Shown: positions 8,965 to 58,900 of the stretch, in pieces
Layout: each line of letters begins with the position of its first letter
Numbering within the stretch: position 1 is the first letter of the stretch
Virus record (IMG/VR): IMGVR_UViG_3300046005_000547
Location: 1-64,000 of that record
Length of the DNA: 64,000 nt
Reading direction: 5' to 3' (one strand)
Made by a program: the position numbers and the translations under genes
Notes under the pieces: model-generated
Told to the model about the DNA's origin: nothing
Databases searched by the model: none
The model's input: the letters and a program-made list of their open reading frames with translations, nothing else

Positions 8965-9281
8965 TCAGTATCATTCACAATACCGATTGACATCATTCTA
9001 GTTTTTGGTAGATAAGGTGAAACTTGTGTGTTCTTGAAAACAATCAAAGCATTTGTCCAATTACATCCATCTTCAGAAACTTCAAGTTTAACTGTGAATG
9101 ATTTGTTGACTGAAGAAGCTCTTTCAAGCAATTCTTTAATTGGATGAGCTTGATGTCTGTTGTCTTCTTTGATAATCATTTCAAGAACTTTGTTTTTGTT
9201 TAATTTTGATGCGTTCATTTTATACCACCTTTGTAATTGATTTAGATTGATTTAAGTTCATTGGATTCTTCCAACTTGAAA

Positions 9282-9314
9282 TCTATTATAATGATTTTTC
9301 TTATCATCGAAAGA
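9282..9314 (-). promoter_or_regulatory. early-type promoter TCTTTCGA-N16-TATAATAGA
   Basis: exact motif, one of 7 copies, upstream of a gene start. Confidence 0.8.
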
Positions 9315-9893
9315 AAAATCTTATTAAATTTTAAACAAAAAGAAACCCCAATTCCTAAGAACTGAGGTTTTTGATTATTCTAATTTGAACTTGGTCAATA
9401 ATTGGACGAATTGTACATATTCATCATCTGTTAATTCACCAATTGCTTTATCCAATAGATACGTTGTACTGAAATAGAACAGATTGTTATCTTCATCATA
9501 AAATTCTAATTCGGATTTCATGTCATTGTATAATACTCTATTCATTTTCGAACACCTCATGTATATAATGTAACATTATATAAGAATCGGTTATGTCTGC
9601 TCCATCAACTAGATAAATCGATTTGGATTCATCAATTCCATATACAGAAATCTCAGTTCCTTCCAATTCAACTACCACGGTATCATTCTTCTTGATAACA
9701 TCTAAACATACATCAACTTTCATTTCTTTTACCGTAATCTAAAATAGTGCATTCGCAAATATATAAATTGTATGAACAAATCAACAATGCTTCTTTAATC
9801 CGTTCCGGCGTCATCTTTTCAATAATCTTTGCCCTGTATAATGCATCATTATTACAACCCGTTAATATCAACAACGATAACAATAAAATAAAT

Positions 9894-13982: not shown

Positions 13983-14023
13983 GATACACCACCCTTATAA
14001 AAGATTAAAATTTAATGTTGAAA

Positions 14024-14056
14024 TCTATTATAAGGGATTTTCGATGTTTCGAAAGA
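14024..14056 (-). promoter_or_regulatory. early-type promoter TCTTTCGA-N16-TATAATAGA
   Basis: exact motif. Confidence 0.8.
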
Positions 14057-14063
14057 TTTATTT

Positions 14064-24467: not shown

Positions 24468-24848
24468 TTAAAAGGATTCCAGATTATTATTTTCCGATAT
24501 TCTTCTGCTTGCTATGTTATAATAAGTTTCATCTAATTCACAACCAATGAAATCCCTATTGGTATTCATACAAGCAATTGCCGTGGTTCCAGAACCCATA
24601 CAATTATCCAATATCAAATCACCTTCATCAGAATACGTCTTAATCAACCATTCAAATAAGGCAATAGGTTTCTGGGTAGGGTGTAAATTTGATTTCAACG
24701 TATCTCGTTTGAATTTCAACACTTGAGTCGGATACCTTGTTCCATTATCTTCATACGGTTTGACTTTCATCTTACCAGAATCAACCAATGTCCCTAATTT
24801 ACCATTTCTAACCCCATTAGATACCAACTTACCTTCATGTTTAATCAT
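24468..24848 (-). pseudogene. orphan C-terminal half of a beta-class DNA methyltransferase
   Basis: YPTQVLKF, HPTQKPIALFEWLIKTY, DNCMGSGTT, GCELD present; no DPPY; ATG overlaps the upstream stop. Confidence 0.85.
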
Positions 24849-25613
24849 ACAATTCCAAGTTGCAATGAGAATCAATTCTGTCTAATGATTTTGTATACAT
24901 TTCAGAATCTAATTCGCATCCGATATAAATTCTATTGGTATTCATACAAGCGATGGCAGTTGAACCAGAACCCATAAATCCATCGAATACAACATCATTT
25001 TCGTTAGTGTATGTTTTAACAAGATATTCTAGTAAGGGTACGGGTTTCTGGTTGGATGGAATTGGGTCTTGGGGGATTCATTAGAGAATTTAAGAATGTT
25101 GGTGGGATAATTTGCTCCATCTTGTTCATATTCTGTTCCTACTTCATGTCCACCAGAATATGCAGATGTTGTCTTGACATAATTGATACGTTTCTTATTG
25201 AATTCAACAACACCTTGTGGATTGTATAACATTGGATTTGTTGAATTACGACGTATCGCTCCTTTAGAGAATACTGATATGTTTTCGGTTTCACGTAATG
25301 GCATTCCTTTGGCGTGAACAAATCCATTCTTCCTTGATTTGTGCCAAAGGAAATTATACTTGAAATCAGATAAATTAGAACAAATCAATCTGCTGGTAAA
25401 AGGATCCGTTCCGAATAATACAATAGATCCGTTTGGTTTCAATACTCTAAACCATTCAATCCAAAGTTCATCTATCTTTGACATTAGATCCCATTCCCAT
25501 TTACATGCTGTTGTATTATAAGGTGGATCTTGTAAAATCAATTGTACAGAATCATCTGGTAATGTTTTAAGATATTCTATACAATCAATGTTGTAAATTT
25601 TATTCAATTCCAT
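24841..25613 (-). CDS. beta-class N4-C/N6-A DNA methyltransferase, apparent 1-bp frameshift at ~25050
   Basis: DPPY motif IV; adding one C (CCAACC to CCAACCC) gives HPTQKPVPLLEYLVKTYT...DGFMGSGSTA...GCELD, stop at 24841. Confidence 0.88.
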
Positions 25614-37019: not shown

Positions 37020-37078
37020 TTTGTATTTCCAATAATAAAGTTCAAAGTTGATGTATAATATAAATCAAGAGTAATTTG

Positions 37079-37151
37079 TGGGACTACTTGGATTCAAACC
37101 AAGAATTGCTTCGCTTATGAGGCGAGTCCTTTTTCATTAAGGTATAGTCCC
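37079..37151 (-). tRNA. tRNA with CAT anticodon (Met or Ile2), atypical
   Basis: GGGACTA/TAGTCCC acceptor stem, CTCATAA loop, CTTGG-TTTGAAT-CCAAG T arm; D loop lacks GG; no encoded CCA. Confidence 0.75.
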
Positions 37152-37167
37152 ACAAATTACTCTCAAA

Positions 37168-37196
37168 ATTATATATAACATCTATAATAAAGTCAA
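37168..37196 (-). promoter_or_regulatory. sigma70-like promoter of the tRNA
   Basis: TTGACT-N17-TATAAT directly upstream. Confidence 0.7.
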
Positions 37197-37281
37197 ATTA
37201 AACATTTTTGAAGAGAATGTTCATAAACTCTTTACAATTATATATAATTGTAATTTTAAATCAATTCTTTTTAATAAAAAT

Positions 37282-38082
37282 ATGTTAAACATAAAACAAT
37301 TGTTCGCGCAATATGGTGTAATAGTGAAAGAATCAAAATATCTTAAAATATATGAATCTTTAATGAATTCTCCTCCTGATACAGAAGGATATACCGAAAC
37401 GCATCATATAATACCAAAATGTATTTCTAACGATAACAAAAAATCTAATTTAATTGAAATTTCAGGAAGAAAACATTTTATATGTCATTACTTGTTATGT
37501 AAAATACTTGAAAAAGATACAAAATTTTGGTATAAATTAAATCACGCATTTATTAGATTTGGTTCGAATAATCTAAGTGGTAGATATTATAATTCTAGAT
37601 TATATGAATCTAAACGTAAAAATTTCTCTTCGGTTATGTCAAAATGTCAATCCGGTGAATTAAATTCACAATACGGTAAAATATGGATTTGTCATCCATA
37701 TTCAATTAAACCAACCATAATTTCACCAAATATGTTTGATGAATACTATAATCAAGGATGGTTATTAGGTAGGACAATAAAACATCCAAAAATTAAAAAA
37801 ATTTCTAAACGCGAAATGGAAAATTATGTAGATCCATATAAAGAAAGAGCATTAAAAACAATTTCTTTATTTTTATCTGGTGAATTTTATTCGATAAAAG
37901 AATTTGTAGAAACATCCAATGACAACACTTTAACAGTAAGCAATTTATCTGTACTATGGAGTTCAAAATTTCCTGATTATAAATCGTTCGCAAAATCAAA
38001 TATGGGTGTTAGGAAATCTTCAAAATATTGTAGAGAGTTCCTAAATCATTTAATTGACGACAAATTTATAGAATTAAATTAA
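37282..38082 (+). mobile_element. free-standing HNH homing endonuclease
   Basis: YTETHHIIPK...HFICHYLL..., SQYGKIWICH (NUMOD-like); inverted relative to neighbours. Confidence 0.85.
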
Positions 38083-38597: not shown

Positions 38598-41500
38598 TAG
38601 AGATATCCCCTGTTAATACATTTTGATATGCCATACCATATTCAACAAATTTATCCGATTCCATCTGAGATAATTTAGTGTCAGTTTGTTTGTCTAACAT
38701 CGGTTTAAAGTAATCGGATACATTTTGTTGCGTTGAGTCATCATAATTGAATTGAATGCTTCCAACTGTATATTCTTCTTTAATTACAACAGGAGTCGTT
38801 TGATAATTGTTCGATTCATCAAACGAACGTAATTTGTTGATTGTAGTCTGATTCATTTTCTATCCTTCTGTTGGTCCATGGTAAATAGAGATTCTAATTT
38901 TATCGCCGTAGCTGATTCTTCTCATGTAGTATCGTTTTACCCGTTTCATATCAATTCTGACTTTCTTTTTAGAATGTCTTGGTTTTCTGATTGGGTGGAT
39001 ACCAAATACAAATTCTAACATTGGGTGTTGTAATACATTTGCCGACATTTTGATTCCTCTCTTAATTTAATAACAATGATACCATTCGAATTGTTAAAAC
39101 AAGTTTATTACCATATTTTCTTTCATAACCAACAGAACCGTTTTCCATCAACTTTTTATGAACATTTGTTGGAATATCGTCTAATCCTGTATGTTCACGA
39201 AACTCAATTAAAGATGGTTCGTCGGCAAAGAGTTTTACAACAGGATTATTATACCATCCTTCTATAGTTACACAATATACATAAGAAGATGTTTCTGGTT
39301 TTGATAATTCCTTTTGATATTGTTTTAAAATATCAACGACATCTGATACGTCTTCATTTCTAACGATTAGTTCTGAATTAACACCAACTATTTCAATATC
39401 ACATTTAGATTTGTATACATTGAAATCTTTATATGTTTCGAACTTAGTTATTTGTTCATTTTTCTTTTGGTAGAAATCATATTTGAATGTTCCTGAACCT
39501 AATGTTCCGATCCAATCATAATTAGATATAGACTCTTCAACATTTTCAATCAATTCTGAGGTTGAACCGATATACATTATTTTGTTTGAAATGATATTGC
39601 GAGCAAATGCTTCATATCCATTTTTCTGGAACACTTCAGGATCTTGATTCTTTTTAAAGATGTCAAATAATTGTTCTATTTCAGATTTCATGTAATTCCT
39701 CTTTCAGTTAATTTAAACAACAAATCTATTCTACTACATTTTAGTTCGAAAGTAAAGTCTTTATTTTAATCTTACCCAAGCCTTACTTGATGTGTAATCA
39801 TGGAACCTAATGAACAAATTTATTTTGTAAAATGATAATGTCGTGAATTAGAGCCCAGATTAGATTCTGTTTGTAATTTACACAATAAACGTTAGGATCT
39901 TTCTTCATAACAATCCTTTAATTTCATCGAAGAAGGTGTTAAAATGAATCTTTGGTATTGTTACCCCATTTCCATCAGATTCATTTAATATAAAGATATT
40001 GTCATCATAATCCGATAATTGGAATGATTCATTTAATGTTCTCATTTCAACATATTTACCAACTCTGTAAATCATTACATGTTGAACATCGTTTTGTTGG
40101 AACTTATCTATAAATTTGAATTCGGAATCTAATGTTAAAACAACAATATGTAGTGAATCTTCATATTCAAAGAAAGAACCAATTTGGTCAGAATCATCTA
40201 ACACTAATCCGACGGTAGAGTTTTCAACATATTCTAACGTAAATCCAGATTTGTTGAATTCTTTAATTGATACAACAATTTTATCACAAGACATCGTGTT
40301 TCCCTTGTAAGAAATTGGACGAAGACATTAATACGCATCCAAACATTATCGCATAAGATTGCCAATGTAAAAATGGTTGTTCATAAATTATCATTAATGT
40401 AACAATCACTAACGATAATCCAAACATCTCAATCGATTTATATATTTTCATAACTTATCTCTTATGTCAAGTAACCAATTTCGCAATTTTTTATCTTTGT
40501 TGGTTATATGTTTGAGTAGGATACCATCAGCAATTTGTTCATGTATATACCAGAACGGATACGTAATGAAATATGTTATACCACCAAATAATGCCAACGG
40601 AGAAATTGTAATTGCGTAGATAACCCAATAGATTAAATGTAAAATTCTATTCTTCATTATTGTTCCCAATATCCGATTTCATTTAAGATTAAAAATCGTT
40701 TAATTTCAACACTATGTCCAGGCGTTACTATAACGTAAAAGTTTGTTTCTTCGCCAGAATCATCCTCTTCTACTCCAACTCTGAACGATAACGTATCATT
40801 GAGATACAAATCCATTTTCTTATCACCAGAAGGTTCTTCTTTTGTTACAACATATCTGACACCAGGAATCTTTAATGTTTGTTCTTTGTTAAAACGTAAC
40901 ATGTTAATCTTCATAAGATTCTCTGTAAATTACGACAATATCACCAGATTCCATCAATTGTACAACTTTCTGGACATTTTCTTCATGCATCTCATCAGCT
41001 TGATTATCCATGTCATCCCGTAATTCCGATTTAGATAATCCTCTGTTACAATTCAAGTAGATTTCTTTGGTTACATCTGTTTCAATATATCCATTTTCTT
41101 CGACAGCAAAGAATGTCATTGTTTCGTATACTCTATCGCATCCAATTTCAAGTAATGTTTCTGTTGAATTTCCATTTGAATCTAAACGAACCATATTACC
41201 AACAGAACTCACTACAACTTGATATGTTCCATCTGAGATAAGAGTGTTACGACGATACAAACATCTATCTGCGCAGATAAAATGACCAGCCCATCCGCGT
41301 TCTTTAATTGTAATACCCATTTATTTCTCCTCGACACATTTAATGTAATTGAATGATTTTTGTAATTTGATTGGAACATTTTTATTGTAATCAGATAATG
41401 ATTTATTCGCTCTGATGATTTCCTTCTTACATTCAGGAACAGTCTTAAATGTTTTATCATTATTAAATGTAACAATTTGTTGATTGAATACATTTATGAT

Positions 41501-41599
41501 TAAGAATATCAATTTGATTTTCATATAAACCTCGCTTGTTAAGTTGAAAGTATTATAAATGTTAAAATGTATCTTAGAAAGATAAACATAATAATTAAA

Positions 41600-43780
41600 G
41601 TCGAGGAAGACACTATAAGAATATAAAGAAAACTTAATTGAATCTATAGAACTAACTCAAACCGTCGACATAGTCTAGTATACTGTCTTTTTATCGATTT
41701 CGAAAGGAGTTTCTAGATGGATGTAATTTACACATTCGATGTCCTTAAGACTCTTTCGATACGTGATTATAATTGATTCGATGTTGTCGTTTAAAATGAC
41801 CGTCCATATTTGGATTTTAAGGTGTATTAAATGTATCCTGTAGAGTTGATTGGTGTATATTGGAAACGTTCCATTAAGGTGGATTATTGGACAAATAATG
41901 GATGTTAACGAATCAACATAGACTATTATAATATGAAATTGAATCTAATAAAAATCCTGATGGAATGGTTGGTTCTCATCAGGATTTGGAAGCAGAGATT
42001 TTAATGTTGAATTATTGTATAGAATATACTCGATAAAGACAATAATATGTTCTTGTAGTAATATATTAATGTCTATAAAGAATCTAAAAGAATATTAGAA
42101 AAGCAATAGATACACTAACTGAAACGTCGACATAGTCTAGTATACTGTCTTTTCTAGGATTTCGAAAGGAGTTTCTAATCGTTGATGTTTACATACTCGA
42201 TGTTAAAGATTATCGAATGTCATCTTAAGACTCTTTCGATACATGATGTTTACAGTTTCGATGTAATCGTTAAATCCTGCCCAATTATTTGTTGATTTAA
42301 GAACGATTCATTGTATCTTGTAGACTTGATTGGCATAATACAGAAAAATTCCACTAGAGTCCATTAACGAGCAAATAATGGATGTTAATGATTCGTCCAA
42401 CAATATCAATTCTTAAAATTTCAAACAATAAAAATCCCGACAGAATTTGTTCATTCTTATCGGGATCTGATACGCAGAGATTATATGTTGTTTAATTGTA
42501 TAGAATATTACTATAATAATTCGATAAAGAGTCTTGAAGTAATATAATAAAATCTAAAAGTGTTATTAAAGGTAATAACTGAAACGTCGACATAGTCTAC
42601 TATAACGATATTTCCTCGAAAAGTCAAGAAGTATTTTTATGTTGATATTTACATACTCGATGCCTTAGATTATCCTTCGATGTTCTTGTATGTCTTTCAA
42701 TACATGATTATAGTTGATTCGATGTTATCATTAAATCCTACATGGAAATTTGCCAATATAAGACGAGTTAAATGTATCCTGTAAGTTGATTGACATAATA
42801 CAGGAATATTCCACTAGGATGGATTAACGAGCAAATAATGGACATTAACAATTCAACATAGAACCAATATATTGTAAATTTTATCTAATAAAAATCCCGA
42901 AAGAACTTTTGATTCAATCGGGATCTGACGCGCAGAGATTTTAATGTTGAATAATTACTCGATAAAGACATATTAATACTCTTGTAGTAATATAATAAAG
43001 TCTATAAAGAGTCTTGAAGTAATATAGAAAAATACTAAAAACCATTAATAACTCTACCTGAAACATCGACATAGTCTAGTATACTGTCTTTTTATCGATT
43101 TCGAAAGGATTAACTTTACCCTGTAATATACATACTCGATATCCTTTTCATCTTTAAGACTCTTTCGATACATGATTATTACTCATTCGATGTTAACAAT
43201 TATTATAGACATCCATATTTGGATTTTAAGATGGGTTATATTGTTGACATAGAGTTGATTGTTATAACATGAAAAGATTCCATTAAGATGGATTAACGAG
43301 CAAATAATGGATGATATAGAAGTAATATACAATTACAAAATCTGTAAATTTTATCTAATAAAAATCCCGACAGAATTGTTCATTCTTATCGGGATCTGAG
43401 ACTCAGAGATTTTATGTTCTTTAATTGTATAGAATATTGATATATTAATGCATATAAAGAACCTTGTAGTAATATAGAAGACAATAAAAGAAAACCTAAA
43501 AACAATAGATACATTAACTGAAACGTCGACATAGTCTAGTATATCCGAGTTTTATCGATTTCGAAAGGATTATCTTTACCCTGTAATAATCAAACTCGAT
43601 GTTTAAGATTATCGAATGTCATCTTTAAGACTCTTTCGATACATGATTATAGTTGATTCGATGTTAACATTTAATCCTACATGGAAATTTGCCAATATAA
43701 GATGGATTCAGAATATCCTGTAGAGTTGATTGATGTATATCATTAAAATCATTTTAACTTGGATTAACATTCAAATTTAC
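41600..43780. repeat. array of five ~460-480 bp degenerate tandem repeats (non-coding)
   Basis: core (g/a)tcgacatagtcta at 41664, 42126, 42586, 43065, 43525; recurring gactctttcgatac, gagttgattg, caaataatgga and aataaaaatccYga..tcRggat motifs. Confidence 0.92.
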
Positions 43781-43836
43781 ATCATAAATAATCTTATTGT
43801 ATACATTAAATCATAGACTACATGAACACTTTGATT

Positions 43837-43845
43837 TAATAAATA
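43837..43845 (+). promoter_or_regulatory. T4-late-like promoter TAATAAATA
   Basis: upstream of gp18; the same 9-mer precedes gp19 (46174) and gp22 (50983). Confidence 0.6.
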
Positions 43846-43890
43846 ATAATAAAGAACAAATATATCTCATACACAATAAGGAATTCCTAT

Positions 43891-46107
43891 ATGTCATACC
43901 AAATTTCACCTGGAATCGTGTCTAACGAAATCGATAATGCTATCGTAACAGTAGCCGTGAAATCTCCAGCTGCCGCTTTTGCTGGCGTCTATAGATGGGG
44001 TCCTGTTATGGAACCAACTACCATCAATTCAGAAAAAGCATTGTTGGAACAATTCTTCAAACCAAACAACGTAGATAACGTAACACGAGATTTCCATACG
44101 GCATCGAATTTCTTATCATATTCTGATAATTTATTAAATGTTCGATTAGATACTCTTGGTAACAGAAACGCAGTTGCTCGTCCTTTAATTACAACGAATG
44201 ATTCAATTAAATTCACTGTAACAGGTGGAACTGAAAAAACATTTACCGTTACAACACAAACAACCATTGCTGAAATCGTCACCGAAATTAATGCAGATGT
44301 TGTTTTGAATTTATTGGTACAAGCCAAAGAATTCAAAGGTAAATTAATCTTAACATCAGTTGACACAGCAAAATCTGTTATTGGTAGTTATTTCAGTGGT
44401 GCTACTTTAGTTACCGCCGGCGTAACGACTCCTGTTAATGGTCCAACTGCTGGTTTCGTTACCATCTTACCTGGATCTTCAATTAAAGTCAACAACGATG
44501 ACGCTTACGAAACAAGTTACATCAATGGTGAAGCAAACATCGGCGAATTCATTGCCAAATATCCTGGAACAATTGGTAACTCTATCGGTGTTATCGTTTT
44601 AGATAACAATACATTCGATTACAGTACATTAACTGGTTCGATTACTTCAATTGTAAGTTCTAAAGTTGTCACTGGTTCTGATACTTTATTCACAAAAGAA
44701 TTAGTTCCAGGATCTATTGTTAAATCATCTGCTGGTTCTGTAATTGGCACTGTATCTTCTGTTGAATCTGATACATCATTGACTTTGACCTTGGAAACAC
44801 AAACTCCAGTTTCCGCTATGACAAATGCAAGAGTATCGATTGCTGAAGAATATTCTGCTCTATTCAAAAAACCTTCTACAACTCTTTATGCTAAATCAAG
44901 AAACGTTACCAACGCTCTTGATGAAATTCATATCTTGGTTATCGATAAAGAAGGTACAATCACAGGTGTTCCAGGTTCTATCTTAGAAAAATACTCTTAT
45001 CTTTCTAAAGCAGCTGACGCAAGAAAAGAAGACGGCACTTCTGCTTATTACAAATCTGTAATCAACGCAAGTTCTGATTATATCCGTTGGACAGACCACC
45101 CAACTTCTTTAGGTTCTACTGGATATATCTGGGGTTCTAGATTAGAAGATATGCCCGCTGATTCTTCGTTCAAAACATTAGTTCGTCCGCTCAACATTCA
45201 ATTTGTTGGTGGTAAAGATGATTTTGAAGTTCTTGAAGCAAACATCTTAGATGCATATGCTTTATTGAAAAACAAAGAACAATTCAAATTCAAATTCTTA
45301 ATTACGGGTAAAGCGACTTCTGTTGTAGCAAAATATGCTATCCAAAGTGTCGCTGAATTCAGAAGAAACTGTGTTGCATTTATCTCCCCAATTGATGCCA
45401 TCACAGATGAAATCATTATTGGTAATACTTCTTCTGCTGTAACTAAAATCATTGAATTTAGAGATACATTACCATCAAGTTCATGGGGTGTATTAGATTC
45501 AGGATACAAATACCAATACGATCGTTTCAATGATAAATTCATCTGGGTTCCATTGAATGGTGATATTGCTGGTTTAGCTGCTAGAGTAAATGAACCTTGG
45601 GATTCTCCTGCCGGTTTCTCTAAAGGTCAAATCAAAAATGTTGTGAAATTAGCTGTTAATCCAAACAAAGCCGATAGAGACGCATTATATCCAAGTGGTA
45701 TCAATCCAGTTGTTTCTTTCAAAGGTCAAGGCACTATTCTATATGGTGATAAAACATTATTAGATAAACCTTCAACATTTGATAGAATCGGTACAAGAAT
45801 GTTATTCATCTTCTTAGAAGAATCTATTGAAAAAACAGCTCAATATACATTGTTTGAAATGAATGATGAATTTACAAGAACTCAATTCCGTAATGCGGTA
45901 GAACCTTTCTTGAAAGACATCAAAGGTCGTCGAGGCGTTTATGATTTTAAAGTGATTTGTGATTCTACGAATAACACTGCTGGTGTAGTTGAAACAAATA
46001 ACTTCGTAAGTGATATTATGATTAAACCACAATATAGCATCTCATTTATCACCCTCAACTTTATTGCCACTCGTCAATCTGCGTCATTCTCGACAACTGG
46101 TGCATAA
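43891..46107 (+). CDS. 18: tail sheath gp18
   Basis: SPGI...E.D, WGP, KYPGTIGN, SGYKYQYDRFND, PAGFSKG, RDALY..GINPV, GDKT. Confidence 0.97.
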   Translation: MSYQISPGIVSNEIDNAIVTVAVKSPAAAFAGVYRWGPVMEPTTINSEKALLEQFFKPNNVDNVTRDFHTASNFLSYSDNLLNVRLDTLGNRNAVARPLITTNDSIKFTVTGGTEKTFTVTTQTTIAEIVTEINADVVLNLLVQAKEFKGKLILTSVDTAKSVIGSYFSGATLVTAGVTTPVNGPTAGFVTILPGSSIKVNNDDAYETSYINGEANIGEFIAKYPGTIGNSIGVIVLDNNTFDYSTLTGSITSIVSSKVVTGSDTLFTKELVPGSIVKSSAGSVIGTVSSVESDTSLTLTLETQTPVSAMTNARVSIAEEYSALFKKPSTTLYAKSRNVTNALDEIHILVIDKEGTITGVPGSILEKYSYLSKAADARKEDGTSAYYKSVINASSDYIRWTDHPTSLGSTGYIWGSRLEDMPADSSFKTLVRPLNIQFVGGKDDFEVLEANILDAYALLKNKEQFKFKFLITGKATSVVAKYAIQSVAEFRRNCVAFISPIDAITDEIIIGNTSSAVTKIIEFRDTLPSSSWGVLDSGYKYQYDRFNDKFIWVPLNGDIAGLAARVNEPWDSPAGFSKGQIKNVVKLAVNPNKADRDALYPSGINPVVSFKGQGTILYGDKTLLDKPSTFDRIGTRMLFIFLEESIEKTAQYTLFEMNDEFTRTQFRNAVEPFLKDIKGRRGVYDFKVICDSTNNTAGVVETNNFVSDIMIKPQYSISFITLNFIATRQSASFSTTGA

Positions 46108-46206
46108 TTTACAATTATGACAAGGAGAATCTTGGGAACAATAATACGTTCTCAAGATCTCTGTAATCTTATGTAATAAATAAAATAAAACAAATAAGGA
46201 ACAATA

Positions 46207-46841: not shown

Positions 46842-49727
46842 ATGGATATTTTCGGAATTTCTATTAAAAAGAAATCCGATAAAATGAAGAGGGTGGATTC
46901 ATTTATTCCACCTTCTAATGATGATGGTTCTATTGTATCAACTTCTTCATTTTACGGATTATCATTAGATTTAGATGGAGCTGTAAAAGATGAAAATGAA
47001 TTAATTAGAAGATATAGACAAGCCGCAGAATATCCTGATTGTTCTAATGCCGTAGAGGAAATCGTTAATGAAGCAATTTCCGTTTCGTCTGATGATGCTC
47101 CTGTTACATTAAATCTTAATCATATCGAATCTTTATCTGAAAATGTAAAGAAAGCTATGGCAAAGGAATTCAGCATTATCTTGGATCTATTTGATTTTCA
47201 AGATAAAGGATACGATACATTCAGACAATGGTATATTGACGGTAAGGTTTATTTCCATGCCGTAGTTGACACTGAATCTCCAAAAAAAGGTATCCAGGAA
47301 TTAAGATATGTGGATCCAAGGAAGATTAGAAAAATCAAGGAAATGGTTGTTGAAAAGGATTCCCATGGTAACGATATTAAAAAGTCGGGTGAAACGTATT
47401 ACTTGTTTAATGATTCTGGTATCAATGCTGCAGCCAAATCTGGTGTTAAACTATCTTTAGAATCTGTTTTCTGCGCTACGTCTGGTATCGTTGATTATAA
47501 CACAGGAATGATTAGAAGCCATTTACATAATTCCATCAAAATTATCAATTCATTAAAATATACAGAAGAATCGCTGGTAATCTATAGAGTATCTAGAGCA
47601 CCTGAACGTAGAGTATTTTACATCGATGTAGGTAATTTAAATAAAGCTAAGGCAGACCAATATATCCAAGATACAATGGCTCGGTTTAGAAATAAATTAG
47701 TTTTCAACAGCACAACTGGTGAAATTAATGATAATAAACAGAACCAATCAATGATGGAAGACTATTGGTTACCTCGTAGAGATAATTCAAAAACAACTGA
47801 AATCACTACGTTACCAGGCGGATGTCTATCAATGGACACTAAAGTTTCATTATTAGATGGTAGAGAAATTACAATTTCTGAAATTGAACAAGAAATGAAA
47901 ACTGGTAAAGAACTTTGGGTTTATTCTTGCGATGAATTTACTGGTCAAATAAAACCTGGATTGATTACTTGGGCTGGAACGACGCAGAAATCTGCTAAAG
48001 TTATGAAAATAACATTAGATAATGGTGAATCTTTAATTTGTACACCAGACCATAAATTTCCAATTTATGGTAAAGGATTTGTTGAAGCGAAAGATTTAAT
48101 GATTGATGAATCGATGATACCATTATATCGGAAACACGAACAAATATCAAAAGCAAAAAAACGAGGATATGAACAATTTTTCGATAATCATAAAAAAGAA
48201 TGGGTATTCACTCATAGAATGGTTTGTGATGAATTGAAAGATAAGAAGATTTTCGATTATGTATATGATGAAGAATACAAAGATAGAACTAAAAATGTAA
48301 GACATCATATTGATTGTAATAGATTCAATAATAATCCAAACAATTTATGTTTTATGTCTTGGGATGACCATGCTAAACTTCATTCAGATTTATCGTTTAG
48401 TGAAGAAGCATACATGCTCGGAACTAGAGCTGCGGCGGAAAAACTTCGTATAATGAAAATTGAAGATCCAGATGCATATAAAAAACGTTCTGATGAAATT
48501 GGATTAAGAACCATGGAATGGCATGCTTCATTGAATGAAACGGAAAAACAAGAATTTATTGAATCTTTAAAAAAAGGTAATACTGAATATTGGGAAAATA
48601 TTTCTGAAGATTTGAGGGAACATAGAGCTAATGTATCTAGAACAAATGCATATTTGGGTATGTTATCGACTCAACACAAGTTACAAACAGATCCAATTTT
48701 TTATGAATTTTTTTGCGAACAAAATCGTAAATCTTGGGATGATGAACGTAGATTAAAATCCGCAAATATTACCAAAATAATTAGTACAGAACGATGGTTG
48801 TTGAGAGGTGACGAATTAAGAAAAAAACACAAAGAAAATCAAAAACTAGAAATTGATAATTTTATTTTCAAGAAAATAGTGGATTTAATCGCAAATAAAT
48901 CAACGTATAAAATTACATTAGAAGATGTAGTCAATTCATTAAATAATAATGAAGAATGCGTGTCTAGATTGATTGAATTGAACCAACATAAACATATTCC
49001 CAATTATGATGTGTTGGAAGGATTCACTAACAATAATGTTTCTAGATGTGTTAAAGATTATGGATATAAACATTGGATGGATTTTAGACAGAAATTCAAA
49101 TATCACAATCACAGAATTATTGATATTGAATATCTAGATGAAGAAATTGAAGTTGGTACATTAACTATCGACGGAGACGAATTATATCATAATCATCATA
49201 CATTTGCTTTGACTTGTGGAATTTTCACTAAAAATTCGAATTTGTCCGACATATCGGATGTAACTTACTTCCAGAATAAATTGTTTAGATCTCTTCATGT
49301 GCCTATTACAAGATTGATTCCTGAACAATCATTTTCTATTGGTAGAGCAGGTGAAATCACCAGAGATGAAATTAAATTCTCTAAATTCATCACTAGATTA
49401 CGTTCTAAATTTTCAAAAATCTTCATGGAAGCATTGAGATTACAATGTGTTCTGAAAGGAATTATATCTTATGAAGATTTCTCTACGATAGAAAAACAAA
49501 TTAGATTCAACTTTCATGATGATAATCATTTTGCTGAATTATCTGAATCTGAAGTCCTACAAAATAGATTAGCTACATTACAACTTGTTGATACATACGT
49601 TGGTAAATACTTCGATACAAATTGGGTCAAGAAAAATATATTGAAACAATCTGATGAAGAAATTCAAGAAATCCAAGAACGGATGGACGAAGAAAAACCA
49701 CTTATGGAACCAACCGAAGAAGAATAA
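46842..49727 (+). CDS. 20: portal gp20 containing an intein
   Basis: WYIDG, YRVSRAPERRVFYIDVGNL, EDYWLPRR, EITTLPGG; ~490 aa after removing the intein. Confidence 0.97.
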   Translation: MDIFGISIKKKSDKMKRVDSFIPPSNDDGSIVSTSSFYGLSLDLDGAVKDENELIRRYRQAAEYPDCSNAVEEIVNEAISVSSDDAPVTLNLNHIESLSENVKKAMAKEFSIILDLFDFQDKGYDTFRQWYIDGKVYFHAVVDTESPKKGIQELRYVDPRKIRKIKEMVVEKDSHGNDIKKSGETYYLFNDSGINAAAKSGVKLSLESVFCATSGIVDYNTGMIRSHLHNSIKIINSLKYTEESLVIYRVSRAPERRVFYIDVGNLNKAKADQYIQDTMARFRNKLVFNSTTGEINDNKQNQSMMEDYWLPRRDNSKTTEITTLPGGCLSMDTKVSLLDGREITISEIEQEMKTGKELWVYSCDEFTGQIKPGLITWAGTTQKSAKVMKITLDNGESLICTPDHKFPIYGKGFVEAKDLMIDESMIPLYRKHEQISKAKKRGYEQFFDNHKKEWVFTHRMVCDELKDKKIFDYVYDEEYKDRTKNVRHHIDCNRFNNNPNNLCFMSWDDHAKLHSDLSFSEEAYMLGTRAAAEKLRIMKIEDPDAYKKRSDEIGLRTMEWHASLNETEKQEFIESLKKGNTEYWENISEDLREHRANVSRTNAYLGMLSTQHKLQTDPIFYEFFCEQNRKSWDDERRLKSANITKIISTERWLLRGDELRKKHKENQKLEIDNFIFKKIVDLIANKSTYKITLEDVVNSLNNNEECVSRLIELNQHKHIPNYDVLEGFTNNNVSRCVKDYGYKHWMDFRQKFKYHNHRIIDIEYLDEEIEVGTLTIDGDELYHNHHTFALTCGIFTKNSNLSDISDVTYFQNKLFRSLHVPITRLIPEQSFSIGRAGEITRDEIKFSKFITRLRSKFSKIFMEALRLQCVLKGIISYEDFSTIEKQIRFNFHDDNHFAELSESEVLQNRLATLQLVDTYVGKYFDTNWVKKNILKQSDEEIQEIQERMDEEKPLMEPTEEE
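47823..49235 (+). mobile_element. 471-aa intein with HNH endonuclease
   Basis: starts CLSMDT, block B TPDH, ends FTKN followed by Ser; internal RHHIDCNRFNNNPNNL. Confidence 0.92.
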
Positions 49728-50321: not shown

Positions 50322-50974
50322 TGAAACTAATCACAGAATTATCGGAATCCGTTACGTATATTACGGAATCAATCGGCACCAACGATAAAAAACAATACTT
50401 TATCGAAGGTTGTTTTTTACAAGCGGAAACTCCAAACAGAAATGGTCGAAATTATCCCAAACATGTAATGGAACGCGAAGTAAAAAACTTCCAAACATTA
50501 ATCAAAGAAAATCGTTCTACTGGTGAATTGGGACATCCTGATACATTAAACGTAATGCCTGAAAACATTTCTCATCTAATCACTGAATTGAAATTTGATG
50601 GTAACAATGTAATTGGTAAAGCTAAAATCCTAGAATCAATGCCAAAAGGATATATCGCCAAATGTCTATTAGATGAAGGTGTTAAAATTGGCGTTTCTTC
50701 AAGAGGTGTGGGTTCTTTATCTCAACGTAAAGACGGTATCAATGAAGTCCAGGATGACTTCTATCTACGTACAATTGACATTGTATCAGAACCATCTGGC
50801 ATTGATTGCTGGGTTAATGGTATCATGGAAGGCGTTGAATGGGTTAATGTTAATGGCATTTTCACTCAAAAACAATTAGACGAATCAAAACGAATTATCA
50901 AAAAAACTTCATCTTCTGACCTACAAAAAGTTTGTCTTGAACAATTCCAACATTTTCTCAATTCTATCAAGTGA
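50321..50974 (+). CDS. 21: prohead protease gp21
   Basis: MKLITE, NRNGRNY, GELGHP, SH, GVSSRGVGS, DIVSEPS. Confidence 0.96.
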   Translation: MKLITELSESVTYITESIGTNDKKQYFIEGCFLQAETPNRNGRNYPKHVMEREVKNFQTLIKENRSTGELGHPDTLNVMPENISHLITELKFDGNNVIGKAKILESMPKGYIAKCLLDEGVKIGVSSRGVGSLSQRKDGINEVQDDFYLRTIDIVSEPSGIDCWVNGIMEGVEWVNVNGIFTQKQLDESKRIIKKTSSSDLQKVCLEQFQHFLNSIK

Positions 50975-51021
50975 AAATAATTTAATAAATAATTGAATAT
51001 GAATAAAGAATGGAGAATTTA

Positions 51022-51930
51022 ATGACCATCGAACAAAAATTACTAGAGTCGTTACAAAACGGCGAAGCAACGGGAAAAACTATTATGGAATCAATTAGCA
51101 GTTTATTCGAAGGTGAAGAATTTACCGACGACTTTAAAGCTAAAGCATCGGCGATCTTTGAATCTGCTGTTGTCAACAAAGCTAAATCTATGACCGATGA
51201 ATTAGAATCAATCTATGAATCTAAATATTCTGAATTAGAATCATCTTATGAAACTAAACATGAAGAATTAAGTTCAATCTATGAATCTAAATTTGATGAA
51301 TTAGAAACAACTTTCGAAACCAAATTCATTGATTTCCAACAAGTTAATGAAGCTGTATTCAACAAACAACATGAAGCATTATCTGAACAAATTGATGGAT
51401 ACTTAGATTATGCGTCTCAATCTTGGATTGATGCAAACAAAGTTGCTGTTGAATCAGGTTTGAAATCTGAAATTGTTGAAGGTTTCATTACCAACATGAA
51501 AGGTCTTTTTGAATCAAGTTACATCGATCTTCCATCTGCTCAATTAGATGTTGTCAAAGAATTAACTGAAGAAAATGAAACTCTCAAAGCTCAGTTAAAA
51601 GAAACTGTTGATTCTACAATCAAATACAAACGTGAAATTGAATCTACCAAACGTTCTGCTATCATTGAAGAATTCACTTCTGCATTAACATTAGTTGAAG
51701 CAGACAAATTCCGCGAATTGGCTTCTGAATTATCTTTCACGGATAATGACAAATTCCGCACAAAATTACATACAATCACTGAACACTACTTCAAGAAAGA
51801 TACCAAACCAACTGGCATCTCTCCTGTAACAGATACTCCTGTTTTAACTGAAGAATTTATCGTTACTCCAACAAGTTCAGATTCAAATGTCTCAGCATAT
51901 GTTGCTGCTCTTAGCCGTTACACAAACTAA
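51022..51930 (+). CDS. 22: prohead scaffold gp22
   Basis: acidic coiled coil, FKAKASAIFESAV, DGYLDY; likely start MTIEQ after GGAG. Confidence 0.9.
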   Translation: MTIEQKLLESLQNGEATGKTIMESISSLFEGEEFTDDFKAKASAIFESAVVNKAKSMTDELESIYESKYSELESSYETKHEELSSIYESKFDELETTFETKFIDFQQVNEAVFNKQHEALSEQIDGYLDYASQSWIDANKVAVESGLKSEIVEGFITNMKGLFESSYIDLPSAQLDVVKELTEENETLKAQLKETVDSTIKYKREIESTKRSAIIEEFTSALTLVEADKFRELASELSFTDNDKFRTKLHTITEHYFKKDTKPTGISPVTDTPVLTEEFIVTPTSSDSNVSAYVAALSRYTN

Positions 51931-55901: not shown

Positions 55902-58900
55902 ATGAAAGAAATTATTGAAGAATATCAACAAACTAAAGATTTTGAAAATGTGGTGTATAGAAACGGATTGAATTTGTTGGTCGTTTCTAAATTGTCCGAA
56001 TGTAAATATGAATTGAAATATCAAGGTAATCATAATGAAACTAAAATTATGATTTCATATGTTGATAAAGTGAATGCCGATAATGTTATTGGATACATCA
56101 GTAATTATTACGATGTATTTGAATATGAATCATTCGAAGAAGATGATAAAATTTATATTGTATTTTCTAAAAATGAAATGTACAGTTACGTTCAAGAACA
56201 TAAAAGATTAACAAACAATTATTGTCTGGATAAAGATCCTTCTGTGTTTGAAGGATACCCGTTGGTTTGTTATAGACTTTGTATGTATAATGATACCGAT
56301 ATTGTTATTGAAAATGTATCAAATAGTGAAAAACATAAATTCAATATGCCAAATTCTGATTTTTCTTCATATCAATTGTATGATTATGCAGAAGGATATT
56401 TGAAAGGAATGTCAAACAGTAATTTAGAAGTTACCAGATGTTTTTGTTTAGATGGGACGATGTATCTATTATGTTTTGATATTAACAATAAATTTTATAG
56501 TTCATAATAAATGGAATTTTACTACATACAGGAAATTGTAAATGAATCATAAATGTATAGATTTCAAAAGAATAGACGACGACTTATTTTGCGTCGATTG
56601 TAAGAAACTTATAGACGTTCCAGTTAAAATTGAAGTTGGAAAATGTTATCAGAAATTTGGAACTGAAGATGTATACGAAGCAACTTCATCTAGTGTGGAA
56701 AATGGAGTTGAAAAATTCACACTCATTGGATTAAAGGATAGACATGTAACATTCTATAGGAATTTAGAACCAAGAGATTTGGTGACAAATAGACAATACA
56801 ATCAGATACCAGAATTTTTCAATAAGGAAGTGATTAAACCATTTTACGTTTCCAAGGTTGGTATCTATAAAACGGTTATCGGTGATACTGCGTTGATTAA
56901 ACAGATTGGTGACAAAGATTTATGTTATGGTAGATTGATTGGCGATACGCAAAATCGAAAATGGTATAGAACTGGGAAGGAATCATGTCCACCGGACACT
57001 AGAAATAACAGTTTGATTGAATTTATTGAAGAAGTTACGCTTTACAGTTGAGAATGAATATGATTACAGCATTAGAAGCGTATAAATTGGGTAATACAAA
57101 GAAGCAGATGGAATCTGAACGAATCGATGGATTGGTTGAACAGATGATTACTCGTAAGATTGAACCGTTGGTTAGAAGTAAATCTGCGGACATGAAATGT
57201 GTATTTACATGGCAGCATTTTTCTGATTTTGTTGGTCAAGATGATTTATTTCATTGTTTCAATATATTGAAGGAAAGATTGTTAGGATACGGATACTCGG
57301 TTACCGTATCTGGTAACAGAACAGACCCATTAAAAACAGAGATGTTGGTTAAATGGGAAGAACCTAGAGAAATTGCCAAAGAATATAGTAATACAACAAT
57401 CTCTGAATATGGTAATAATTATGAAAAAGTCTAAGATTACATTAGAATCATTGGTTGAATCGTATAAATTATCTGGTGATGATTCGTTATTATTGGATAA
57501 TGCAGTTACAATAGTTGATGTTAATTGTTCTGGAGACGATATTTTATTGAATTTTGAAGATTACGAATCAACATGGATTAAACATGTTGATAAAATTGAT
57601 ATGGAAACGGATATCCAAGTAGTCATTAGATTTTTGCGTAAAGAATATAATGTAACCGAATATGAAGTGTTCAGAACAAAAGAAGATAAATTAAAATTGG
57701 TATTTGTTCGATATAAGATCGATTCAGATAATTGGAAAACTGAATTGGAAATTATTAAATTTTATCAAACTGGTGATGTTAAATCGTTTGATTTTGATGG
57801 TAAGAAAGTGTTTAGATTATACATCGATGAAATGGAGGATGAAGATTCTAAATACATTATGGATGCCATTGATATTGAAACCGACGAACCAATAATGGGA
57901 TTTTCATATTTGGAAGATAAGGAAACGATAGATTCCGAAGAAGGATTAGATTATCATTTGGGGTTTATTAAGGAAATCGTAAGAGAGGAAACAGGATTAG
58001 TTTGGCATAGAATATTTGATTATGAAGGATATATTCATGTAATGTTCTTGGATAATTTGAATGTTGTAAATTTATCTGATGAATGTATTGAAATTACAGA
58101 CGGTGAAGAACGGGTTATTATTCCCAAGCAGAATATCTTTTGGTTGATTAATCAGATAATGATTATGAGTGGATACGAAAGAGACGATTAAACATGGAAA
58201 ACTGCTTGATAGTGGAATGTTTATAATATATGTCAATCAACTCTACAGGATAACAAAAACAAACATTAATGGAGGATTAAAATGAATTTTACAAAGGTGT
58301 ATTCAAAACAGAGAGGTATCCATCACATATCAGATGACGTTGATGGTTGGATCTTTTTGATTATCGAATCAAAAAGAGGTGGATTCAATTTGTTTTCCAG
58401 TGAAGGTGAACGGAGACAGAATCTAAGGAAAGTTGGGAATTTCAATGATATTGGATCTGCAAAACGATTTGCCATTAAAACAATAGGTGTCTAATGAATA
58501 ATAGAGTATATTTTACATTATTGAATGGAACAGAAACTTGGTTAGGGTGTAATGATATTATTGATGTAATATATGAAAACGATTTGTTGACTAGAATCGA
58601 GTATGAAGACCAAGGTGATTTATTTCCTTATGTAAGAATTAGTCATATAATTGTTATTGGCGGTAAAGAAGATATTCTAAAGAGGATTGAAAATGTTAGG
58701 CAAAAATGATATGGAATTTGTATTGATATTATTATTGTGTGCTAATGTAGGATGATATGTTTAAAATTAAAGTGATTGACCAAGAATTTGATATCAAAGA
58801 AGATGAGATAATCAATACATTGAGAGTTGATATTTCTGGATTGGAAGAAGAATACGATTATGTTTGTCTAGGATCCGGTCAGACAAGAAATAAAATATAT

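What the first reader, a model, noticed from the sequence alone, without database searches (positions are those of the whole stretch)
41660..43670. Dense TCGA clusters in the array, shared with the promoter motif: possible methylation-sensitive control
Seen: each unit has 5-7 TCGA tetramers in ~150 bp (GTCGAC, ATCGAT, TTCGAA, TTCGAT). Base composition predicts well under one. The seven early-type promoters also carry TCGA in their -35 region. Established: GATC clusters at E. coli oriC couple Dam methylation to initiation. Inference: TCGA could be a protein-binding iteron or a methylation target, possibly of the MTase at 24841-25613.
Basis: inference. Interest (0 to 1): 0.6.

Follow-up and report, generated by a model that had tools for sequence, protein, structure and literature searches.

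The report
TCGA boxes in phage promoter arrays
The TCGA clusters are real, but they are repeated copies of the -35 box of this lake phage's own early promoters, packed into 24 gene-less promoter-terminator cassettes, and nothing ties them to the phage's broken methyltransferase.

Summary
Each of the five units at 41660-43670 holds 5-7 TCGA in 115-135 bp, where about 0.4 is expected. TCGA is the most enriched tetramer in the arrays (5.4x). Genome-wide TCGA is at expectation (O/E 1.0-1.1).

The window is the start of a 234.7-kb T4-like lake phage. The roughly 460-bp unit occurs 24 times in 7 intergenic arrays. A sister phage (249 kb, 70-80% nucleotide identity) has 24.

It has a -35 TTTCGA, a 17-nt spacer, and a -10 TATACT followed by AGA. 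An A+T-rich stretch of 125-195 nt and an intrinsic terminator follow. The outermost unit of each array has no terminator and fires towards the flanking DNA; genes follow on that strand in five of seven arrays.

The other TCGAs are inverted copies of the -35 box at about -67, -85, -107 and -129, roughly two helical turns apart. They are the best conserved 4-mers of the upstream region (96-98% of 47 units, median 32%).

This fits protein-binding cis elements tied to early transcription, or possibly R-loop origins. Methylation control is unsupported. The only methyltransferase is beta-class, frameshifted in this phage and intact in the sister. No TaqI-like enzyme is present.

The parts
41600..43810 (-). 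Array 1 of 7: five tandem cassettes of about 460 bp, functionally oriented on the minus strand, lying between the minus-strand early genes (up to 41524) and the plus-strand tail sheath gene (43891)
41677..41705 (-). P1 of unit 1, the outermost: -35 TTTCGA 41700-41705, -10 TATACT 41677-41682, start near 41671. No terminator follows; it reads into the ORFs from 41524 downwards
42139..42167 (-). P1 of unit 2: -35 TTTCGA 42162-42167, -10 TATACT 42139-42144, start near 42133
42599..42627 (-). P1 of unit 3, the variant with a consensus-like -35: TTGACT 42622-42627, 17-nt spacer, TATAGT 42599-42604. TCGA lies in the spacer at 42616
43078..43106 (-). P1 of unit 4: -35 TTTCGA 43101-43106, -10 TATACT 43078-43083
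43538..43566 (-). P1 of unit 5: -35 TTTCGA 43561-43566, -10 TATACT 43538-43543
41736..41781 (.). Upstream TCGA boxes of unit 1 (inverted -35-box copies) at 41736, 41756, 41778
42197..42261 (.). Upstream TCGA boxes of unit 2 at 42197, 42213, 42236, 42258
42657..42722 (.). Upstream TCGA boxes of unit 3 at 42657, 42677, 42719
43136..43190 (.). Upstream TCGA boxes of unit 4 at 43136, 43165, 43187
43596..43661 (.). Upstream TCGA boxes of unit 5 at 43596, 43612, 43636, 43658
41950..41984 (-). Intrinsic terminator ending the unit 2 P1 transcript: hairpin 41955-41984, T run 41950-41954, 179 nt from the start, dG -12.2
42430..42465 (-). Intrinsic terminator of the unit 3 transcript (159 nt, dG -16.5)
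42890..42923 (-). Intrinsic terminator of the unit 4 transcript (178 nt, dG -14.4)
43360..43394 (-). Intrinsic terminator of the unit 5 transcript (168 nt, dG -17.9)
41834..41852 (-). Core of the second conserved module (P2) in unit 1. It is a 19-mer preceded by a TATAAT-like box and short palindromes. Diverged copies are in units 2 (42314-42332), 3 and 4, and an exact copy is in unit 5 (43714-43732)
58190..58281 (+). Solo copy of the P2 module just upstream of the 70-aa gene at 58282, which suggests P2 is a promoter plus leader
9250..9330 (-). Canonical early-type promoter (CTTTCGA, 16 nt, TATAAT, AGA). One of seven in the window; the others are near 12902-, 14032-, 23270-, 28739-, 61438+ and 63601+
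24468..25613 (-). PF01555 DNA methyltransferase in pieces: N-terminal part 25613-25029, frameshift, C-terminal part 24975-24841, and an extra C-terminal-half copy 24875-24468.

Best explanation
The TCGA clusters are the cores of a short DNA box (YATCGAR, often ATCGAAAGAGTC) that doubles as the -35 element of this T4-like phage's own early promoter class. Each unit of about 460 bp is a gene-less transcription cassette on the minus strand of the window. It starts with a conserved module, P2. Next come three to five inverted copies of the -35 box at about -129, -107, -85 and -67, roughly two helical turns apart. Then comes an early-type promoter, P1, with TCGA in its -35 box, often in its spacer, and at +3. 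A poorly conserved A+T-rich stretch of 125-195 nt and an intrinsic terminator close the unit. The outermost cassette of each array lacks the terminator and reads out of the array; in five of seven arrays genes follow on that strand. I infer that the boxes are protein-binding sites read at the DNA level by whatever reads the -35 box, either RNA polymerase sigma region 4 or an unidentified phage or host factor. On this reading the arrays are amplified recruitment, enhancer or titration platforms for early transcription. Shown: the anatomy, the promoter similarity, the terminators, the conservation and the genome-wide distribution. Inferred: that a protein binds, and what the arrays achieve.
For: A bipartite matrix built from 19 non-array promoters scores 19 of 24 array units at 18.5-19.4 bits, all on the same strand relative to the unit and all with spacer +1. 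The genome has 50 sites over 14 bits, against 1-5 in shuffles. The other 5 units carry TTGACT, 17 nt, TATAGT at the same place. A stable hairpin followed by TTTTTATT lies downstream of P1 within 330 nt in 32 of the 48 anchor sites scanned in the two phages, at 125-195 nt in most of them. The stems differ between units but stay fully paired. Genes follow the outermost promoter on the same strand in five of seven arrays: small ORFs after array 1; DNA ligase and the gp55-like late sigma after array 3. TCGA sits at fixed positions: +3 in 24/24, -32 in 19/24, -26 in 12/24, -67 in 23/24, and -83 to -88, -107 and -129 in most units. The sister phage shows the same slots. Over 47 units, the TCGA windows at -106 and -66 are kept in 98% and 96%, the highest values in -290 to -40, where the median 4-mer window is 32%. 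At the -85 slot the flanks flip orientation while TCGA is kept. No conserved RNA fold covers the boxes on either strand. There is no conserved ORF and no Rfam match.
Against: No binding protein was identified. The phage has no MotA or AsiA and no sigma with region 4. The genes next to the arrays have no DNA-binding annotation and are not paralogous. No RNA data exist for this phage; all public runs holding it are DNA, so promoter use, start sites and termination are predictions. The array promoter differs from the canonical one in spacer length (+1), in its -10 (TATACT) and in 11 extra nt after the AGA, so it could be weaker or differently regulated. It is unclear why internal promoters that end in terminators would be kept. 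The same anatomy fits an R-loop origin.
Confidence: 0.5

Rival explanations
1. The arrays are clusters of T4-type replication origins. Each early promoter fires into an A+T-rich unwinding element, the transcript forms an R-loop that primes leading-strand synthesis, and the evenly spaced TCGA boxes are origin iterons like those at T4 oriE.
For: [quoted passage not shown] Here the P1-transcribed stretch (+25 to +130) has 22.5% GC, below the 5th percentile of genome windows. Four of the seven arrays sit at divergent strand switches (arrays 1, 3, 4 and 7). Arrays 1, 2, 3 and 7 lie within about 1 kb of extremes of cumulative GC skew, and array 4 lies about 3 kb from one. The boxes are 20-22 bp apart. 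The RNA sequence itself is poorly conserved, as expected if only transcription matters.
Against: GC skew follows gene orientation (+0.106 for plus genes, -0.102 for minus genes) and does not change at arrays 5 and 6, where orientation does not change, so it gives no independent support. Non-coding DNA in an A+T-rich phage is expected to be A+T-rich. A strong terminator after each promoter is not a feature of T4 oriF or oriG. No initiator gene was found nearby.
Confidence: 0.2
2. The units are genes for a family of about 170-nt small RNAs, 17 copies with terminators in this phage. The product is the point, and the TCGA boxes are only their upstream promoter elements.
For: Each internal unit has a promoter and an intrinsic terminator bounding 125-195 nt. 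The first 25 nt or so of the predicted RNA are strongly conserved in both phages. A small UCUG...CAGA hairpin often precedes the terminator. Transcript folds are more stable than shuffles, mean z -2.8.
Against: The body of the RNA is the least conserved part of the unit and carries indels. No consensus structure emerges beyond the terminator and there is no Rfam match. The conserved 5' stretch (TTTCAGTT) is shared with ordinary mRNA promoters (TTTCAAGTT), so it looks like a promoter-proximal feature and not an RNA seed. The upstream, non-transcribed boxes are better conserved than the RNA.
Confidence: 0.1
3. One reading: TCGA is a methylation target of the phage MTase at 24841-25613 or of a host enzyme, and methylation of the clustered sites gates promoter or origin activity, as Dam does at oriC, Mu mom and P1 pac.
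For: A palindromic tetramer is clustered in and upstream of a promoter and is conserved even where its flanks change. The phage lineage encodes a DNA methyltransferase.
Against: The MTase is beta-class PF01555, closest to M.RsrI, M.MboIIA and M.PvuII. It is frameshifted in this phage in two independent assemblies and intact only in the sister, yet both keep the boxes. No TaqI_C or Eco57I-type domain passes its cut-off in either genome. TCGA outside the arrays is at expectation. The conserved box is 7-12 bp long, not 4.
Confidence: 0.05
4. The boxes are inert debris: degraded -35 copies left by recombinational slippage between promoter-terminator cassettes, spread by tandem duplication and kept alike by gene conversion.
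For: Degraded, mis-spaced -35/-10 copies near such cassettes are described in T4-like phages (PMC4122927). One box with a TATAAT-like hexamer only 8 nt away looks like a collapsed divergent promoter in about a third of the units. Array copy number differs between the sister phages.
Against: Gene conversion would homogenise all columns alike. Instead the TCGA cores are kept in 96-98% of 47 units, while neighbouring 4-mers have a median of 32%. The same slots are kept in a phage only 70-80% identical.
Confidence: 0.05

Closest known systems
PeSL (promoter-early stem-loop) cassettes of T4-like phages (Arbiol 2010; Comeau 2014, PMC4122927)
   Same: Both are composite terminator stem-loop plus sigma70-like early promoter elements, repeated through a T4-like genome and intergenic. 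Each phage lineage has its own -35 flavour (TTTACW in T4/PST, TTGYVH in KVP40/nt-1; here TTTCGA). Both are associated with copy-number and indel differences between sister phages. Four of 20 solo promoters here have a hairpin and T run 19-28 nt upstream of the -35 box, as in a classical PeSL.
   Different: In the arrays the stem-loop lies well upstream of the promoter, separated from it by the conserved P2 module and the TCGA boxes, not immediately before it. Internal units flank no ORF and have no Shine-Dalgarno or start codon. Units are about 460 bp and stand head-to-tail in arrays of 2-5, taking 4.7% of the genome.
T4 replication origins oriE, oriF and oriG (review PMC3016281)
   Same: Both have a promoter followed by an A+T-rich stretch. 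T4 oriE has evenly spaced short direct repeats and uses an early promoter. Both lie at points of transcriptional divergence and skew change, and there are several per genome.
   Different: There is no sequence similarity. T4 origins are single, not tandem arrays. T4 has no terminator after the unwinding element. Origin activity here is untested.
Baculovirus homologous regions (hrs) (e.g. PMC4535591)
   Same: Both are several dispersed arrays (seven in SpltNPV II, seven here) of 2-8 tandem repeats with a palindromic core. The hrs act as enhancers of early genes and as origins.
   Different: The viruses and hosts are unrelated. The hr repeats are 64-72 bp with a 24-30 bp palindrome bound by IE1. 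Here the units are 460 bp, contain their own promoter and terminator, and no binding protein is known. This is an analogy only.
Dam-site clusters that couple methylation to function (E. coli oriC, Mu mom promoter, P1 pac); from general knowledge
   Same: A palindromic tetramer is clustered in a control region far above background.
   Different: Those systems have a cognate methyltransferase of known specificity. Here none is evident, and the phage's own enzyme belongs to another class and is broken.

Membership tests
PeSL cassettes of T4-like phages | sigma70-like early promoter with -35 and -10 boxes about 17 nt apart | tested here: met
   19/24 units score 18.5-19.4 bits with a matrix built from non-array promoters; 5/24 have TTGACT, N17, TATAGT
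PeSL cassettes of T4-like phages | stem-loop located just upstream of the promoter | tested here: not met
   In the arrays the hairpin is separated from the next P1 by the P2 module and the TCGA boxes. Only 4 of 20 solo promoters have an adjacent hairpin
PeSL cassettes of T4-like phages | Shine-Dalgarno sequence and start codon of a downstream gene at the 3' end | tested here: not met
   Internal units have no conserved ORF; reading frames from the conserved ATG run 4-82 aa with no conserved length. Genes follow on the same strand after the outermost unit in five of seven arrays
PeSL cassettes of T4-like phages | association with indels or rearrangements between closely related phages | tested here: met
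   The array next to the sheath gene has 5 units here, against 2 plus 1 separated unit in the sister phage. The array near ligase and gp55 has 5 against 4
T4-type R-loop origins | promoter followed by an A+T-rich unwinding element | tested here: met
   +25 to +130 has 22.5% GC, against a genome median of 31.4% and a 5th percentile of 23.8%
T4-type R-loop origins | persistent R-loop and autonomous replication of the cloned element during infection | not testable with these tools
   Needs a cultured host; no RNA or replication data
T4-type R-loop origins | position at transcriptional divergence with a compositional shift | tested here: inconclusive
   Four of seven arrays lie at divergent strand switches, and four lie within about 1 kb of a cumulative-skew extreme. 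But skew tracks gene strand and does not change at arrays 5 and 6
Methylation-gated control regions (Dam-type clusters) | target tetramer clustered above background in the control region | tested here: met
   15.3 against 2.83 TCGA per kb
Methylation-gated control regions (Dam-type clusters) | a cognate methyltransferase for the clustered site | tested here: not met
   Only a PF01555 beta-class enzyme, frameshifted here. No TaqI_C or Eco57I domain over cut-off. Host enzymes are unknown
Methylation-gated control regions (Dam-type clusters) | the sites are actually modified | not testable with these tools
   Only short-read contigs of DNA runs are available
Iteron-type origins of plasmids and phages | direct repeats at about two-turn spacing bound by an initiator encoded nearby | tested here: inconclusive
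   Spacing of 20-22 bp is met, but the boxes occur in both orientations and no Rep-like gene is annotated beside any array
Small-RNA gene arrays | conserved RNA sequence or structure between promoter and terminator | tested here: not met
   The body is the least conserved segment. There is no consensus fold and no Rfam hit

The most novel reading that the evidence does not exclude
The seven arrays are a phage counterpart of baculovirus hrs: dispersed, amplified cis-modules that serve as both early-transcription enhancers and R-loop replication origins. On this reading they are read by a still unknown factor that recognises the palindromic TCGA box, which also forms the -35 element of the phage's early promoters. 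That would be a new way for a T4-like phage lacking MotA and AsiA to organise its prereplicative programme.
Probability: 0.2. Interest if true: 0.75.

Novelty: new variant of a known kind. Interest (0 to 1): 0.45.

Why it matters
T4-like phages outside the T4/KVP40 groups lack MotA and AsiA, and it is not known how they time early transcription or start replication. This uncultured lake phage gives 4.7% of its genome to 24 gene-less cassettes made only of regulatory parts, and a sister phage keeps them. The conserved TCGA boxes give a concrete, testable handle for pull-down, reporter and origin assays. If they bind a factor, the arrays would be a new kind of regulatory or origin module in phages. 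They would also supply natural strong promoter-terminator parts for A+T-rich hosts. The methylation idea as stated adds little.

Tried and rejected
- **DNA search of the array against 50,697 phage records:** no match.
- **Rfam at a permissive threshold:** no match.
- **Coding potential:** frames from the conserved ATG vary from 4 to 82 aa with no conserved length. Other small frames seen by eye are not kept between units. Coding was rejected.
the -35-like boxes have no -10 at a proper distance. One has a TATAAT-like hexamer only 8 nt away, in about a third of the units. Rejected as active promoters.
- **RNA-level function of the boxes:** consensus folding of -185 to +10 on both strands gives about 0 kcal/mol and no covariation.
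- **MotA, AsiA and a sigma with region 4:** all absent. Only a gp55-like sigma with region 2 is present.
- **TaqI-like methyltransferase:** absent.
- **Distant relatives:** 72 loci around sheath genes that are 32-63% identical show no similar arrays. Box A, the P2 core and the multi-copy promoter pattern occur only in this phage and its sister.
- **Sequencing runs:** 11 lake-water DNA runs and no RNA run.
- **Laying contigs of four runs on 41000-44400:** short-read contigs break in the array, but unique unit pieces are identical and at flank depth in three runs. This shows presence only and says nothing on function or methylation.
- **GC skew as origin evidence:** rejected as not independent of gene strand.
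- **DnaA, CtrA and IHF sites:** consensus sequences compared with the boxes by eye only; nothing convincing.
- **The large protein searches, structure prediction and complex prediction were not used,** because no candidate binding protein emerged.
Full report
**What the window is.** The 64-kb window is the first part of a 234,735-bp virus record with direct terminal repeats. It has 31% GC. It encodes T4-type proteins:
- sliding clamp, clamp loader, tail sheath (43891-46107), tail tube and gp20-type portal;
- gp23 capsid protein and scaffold;
- a gp55-like late sigma and DNA ligase further on.

Eleven public runs hold all or part of it. All are lake-water DNA metagenomes and none is RNA. Apart from one sister phage, sheath relatives are at most 49% identical over most of the protein. 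The sister is a 249,362-bp record with 70-80% nucleotide identity and 90% sheath identity.

**The observation.** TCGA occurs 196 times in the window, where 182-245 are expected. It occurs 802 times in the genome, where 681-716 are expected. The genome as a whole therefore neither avoids nor favours it. GATC (O/E 0.30), GGCC (0.24), CCGG (0.53) and GTAC (0.55) are depleted.

Inside 41600-43800 there are 34 TCGA. Each repeat unit holds 5-7 within 115-135 bp.

The clusters of five or more TCGA nearly all coincide with a dispersed family of repeats of about 460 bp. The family has 24 units in seven arrays, all in large non-coding gaps. The arrays lie at:
- 41.6-43.8 kb
- 72.6-74.0 kb
- 103.9-106.1 kb
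- 140.1-141.8 kb
- 162.3-163.3 kb
- 196.2-196.9 kb
- 228.6-230.3 kb

The arrays hold 170 of the 802 TCGA in 4.7% of the DNA. TCGA is the most array-enriched of all tetramers, at 5.4x.

**What the unit is.** The phage has about 20 near-identical gene promoters of the form CTTTCGA, 16 nt, TATAAT, AGA. Each sits 30-50 nt before a start codon on the proper strand.

This is the same kind of promoter with a spacer one base longer.

A two-box matrix trained only on non-array promoters scores 19 of 24 units at 18.5-19.4 bits. The genome has 50 sites over 14 bits, against 1-5 in shuffled genomes. The remaining five units carry TTGACT, 17 nt, TATAGT in the same place.

Downstream of this promoter (P1), a hairpin of -7 to -18 kcal/mol followed by TTTTTATT was found within 330 nt in 32 of the 48 anchor sites scanned in the two phages. 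In most of them it lies at 125-195 nt. The stems differ between units (CCTGATG, CCCGATA, CCCACCAG, CCTGACATG and others) but stay fully paired.

The outermost unit of each array has no terminator and reads out of the array. In five of the seven arrays genes follow on the same strand:
- In the window, P1 at about 41671 reads into the small ORFs from 41524 down.
- In array 3 it reads into DNA ligase and the late sigma gene, which are prereplicative genes in T4.

No gene on the promoter's strand was found after the outer P1 of arrays 2 and 5. The transcribed body is the least conserved part of the unit, has indels and holds no conserved ORF. It has 22.5% GC.

Upstream of the boxes lies a second, very well conserved module, which I call P2. 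It has short palindromes, a TATAAT-like hexamer and an almost invariant 19-mer. It also occurs alone, for example at 58234 just before the gene at 58282. I take it for a second promoter with its leader, but this is inference.

**Where the TCGAs sit.** Positions are given relative to the predicted start of P1 in the 24 units.

| Position | Units with TCGA | Context |
|---|---|---|
| +3 | 24/24 | start region |
| -26 | 12/24 | spacer |
| -32 | 19/24 | the -35 box itself |
| -67 | 23/24 | upstream box |
| -82 to -88 | 17/24 | upstream box |
| about -107 | most | upstream box |
| about -129 | most | upstream box |

The upstream copies read YATCGAR, often ATCGAAAGAGTC. That is the reverse complement of the extended -35 box of the gene promoters. 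They are 20-22 bp apart, about two helical turns. At the -85 slot the flanks occur in either orientation while TCGA is kept.

The sister phage has 24 units with the same slots. Over 47 units of both phages, the TCGA windows at -106 and -66 are identical in 98% and 96% of units. These are the highest values in the whole -290 to -40 region, whose median 4-mer window is 32%. Gene conversion alone would not produce such column-specific conservation, so the tetramers are under selection.

The box region shows no conserved RNA fold on either strand, so a DNA-level role is the simplest reading.

**Mechanism.**

*Shown:* the clusters are reiterated -35-box cores inside amplified promoter-terminator cassettes that head operons.

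*Inferred:* the boxes bind a protein, either sigma region 4 of the host polymerase or an unknown factor. On this view the arrays recruit, enhance or titrate early transcription (confidence about 0.5).

*Main rival (about 0.2):* the units are T4-type origins.
- T4 oriF and oriG need only a promoter and an A+T-rich unwinding element.
- oriE uses an early promoter and has evenly spaced 12-nt repeats.
- These origins lie at transcriptional divergence points (PMC3016281).
- The anatomy and positions here fit.
- However, GC skew follows gene strand and adds nothing independent.
- T4 origins also lack the terminator.

*Other rivals:* a small-RNA family (0.1) is weakened by the poor conservation of the RNA body. 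Inert slippage debris (0.05) is contradicted.

**The methylation idea.** The gene at 24841-25613 is a PF01555 beta-class N6/N4 methyltransferase. Its nearest solved relatives are M.RsrI, M.MboIIA and M.PvuII.

In this phage it has a 1-nt deletion relative to the sister phage at the HPTxKP motif, which splits it. The same deletion is present in an independent assembly from another sample. The sister has an intact 271-residue frame. A further C-terminal-half copy lies at 24875-24468. Both phages keep the TCGA boxes.

Neither genome has a TaqI_C or Eco57I-type domain above cut-off. TCGA outside the arrays is at expectation. I put methylation-gated control at about 0.05. It cannot be excluded, because a host enzyme and the actual modification state could not be examined.

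**Comparison with known systems.**
- *PeSL cassettes of T4-like phages* (PMC4122927) are the closest described elements. They are terminator stem-loop plus early promoter units with lineage-specific -35 flavours, implicated in modular shuffling. Four of 20 solo promoters here are classical PeSLs.
- *How the array units differ from PeSLs:* the stem-loop is separated from the promoter by the P2 module and the boxes, internal units flank no gene, and units stand in tandem.
- *Baculovirus hrs* (PMC4535591) are the nearest functional analogy. They are dispersed arrays of palindrome-bearing repeats that act as early enhancers and origins.

I file the feature as a new variant of a known kind.

**Limits.**
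- No RNA, methylation or binding data exist for this uncultured phage.
- Promoter use, start sites and termination are predictions from sequence.
- The short-read contigs of three runs confirm the unique parts of the array at flank depth but break in the repeats.
- The host is unknown.

Noticed in passing
window 46842-49727 (+): The portal gene (Portal_T4, gp20 type) is 961 aa. It carries an intein (Intein_splicing, aa 335-778) with an HNH endonuclease-like insert at about aa 433-570.
   Followed up: partly
window 37078-38082: A homing-endonuclease ORF (37282-38082, plus strand) sits alone among minus-strand replication genes. It lies next to a tRNA-Met gene (37078-37151, minus strand) and the sliding clamp gene.
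   Followed up: partly
window 24468-25613 (-): The PF01555 methyltransferase is split by a 1-nt deletion relative to the sister phage, and the deletion is reproduced in a second assembly. A second copy of only the C-terminal half follows it, and the sister phage lacks that copy.
   Followed up: yes
whole genome G000 and sister G001: There is strong avoidance of GATC (O/E 0.30 and 0.32) and, in G000, of GGCC (0.24), and weaker avoidance of CCGG and GTAC. This suggests host restriction at these sites and no Dam-type protection.
   Followed up: partly
window 58190-58281 (+); also G000 143156, 197282, 224909, 233258, 162008, 162219 (all minus strand): Solo copies of the P2 module (palindromes, a TATAAT-like box and an invariant 19-mer) stand upstream of small genes. 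This may be a second promoter class of the phage, with a conserved leader.
   Followed up: partly
G000 72942-73583 (+), outside the window: An HNH endonuclease gene lies between the two units of array 2 and is preceded by the unit promoter at 72805.
   Followed up: partly
window 51196-51325 (+): There is a 33-nt tandem repeat (3.5-3.9 copies) inside the T4-type capsid scaffold gene (51010-51930).
   Followed up: no
window 43820-43890, 46150-46206, 50950-51009, 56480-56541: Late structural genes are preceded by AATAAATA-like boxes, resembling the T4 late promoter TATAAATA. A gp55-like sigma is encoded at G000 108145-108792.
   Followed up: partly
window 14020-14060 (-) and G000 121010-121045 (+): Two solo promoters carry a second TCGA box (ACATCGAA) inside the spacer, 8 nt after the -35 TCGA. 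The array promoters that have TCGA at both -32 and -26 show a similar arrangement.
   Followed up: no
G000 106080-106130 (+), outside the window: A canonical gene-type promoter (25.7 bits) stands at the outer edge of array 3, between the last array unit and the DNA ligase gene. That operon therefore has two tandem early promoters.
   Followed up: no
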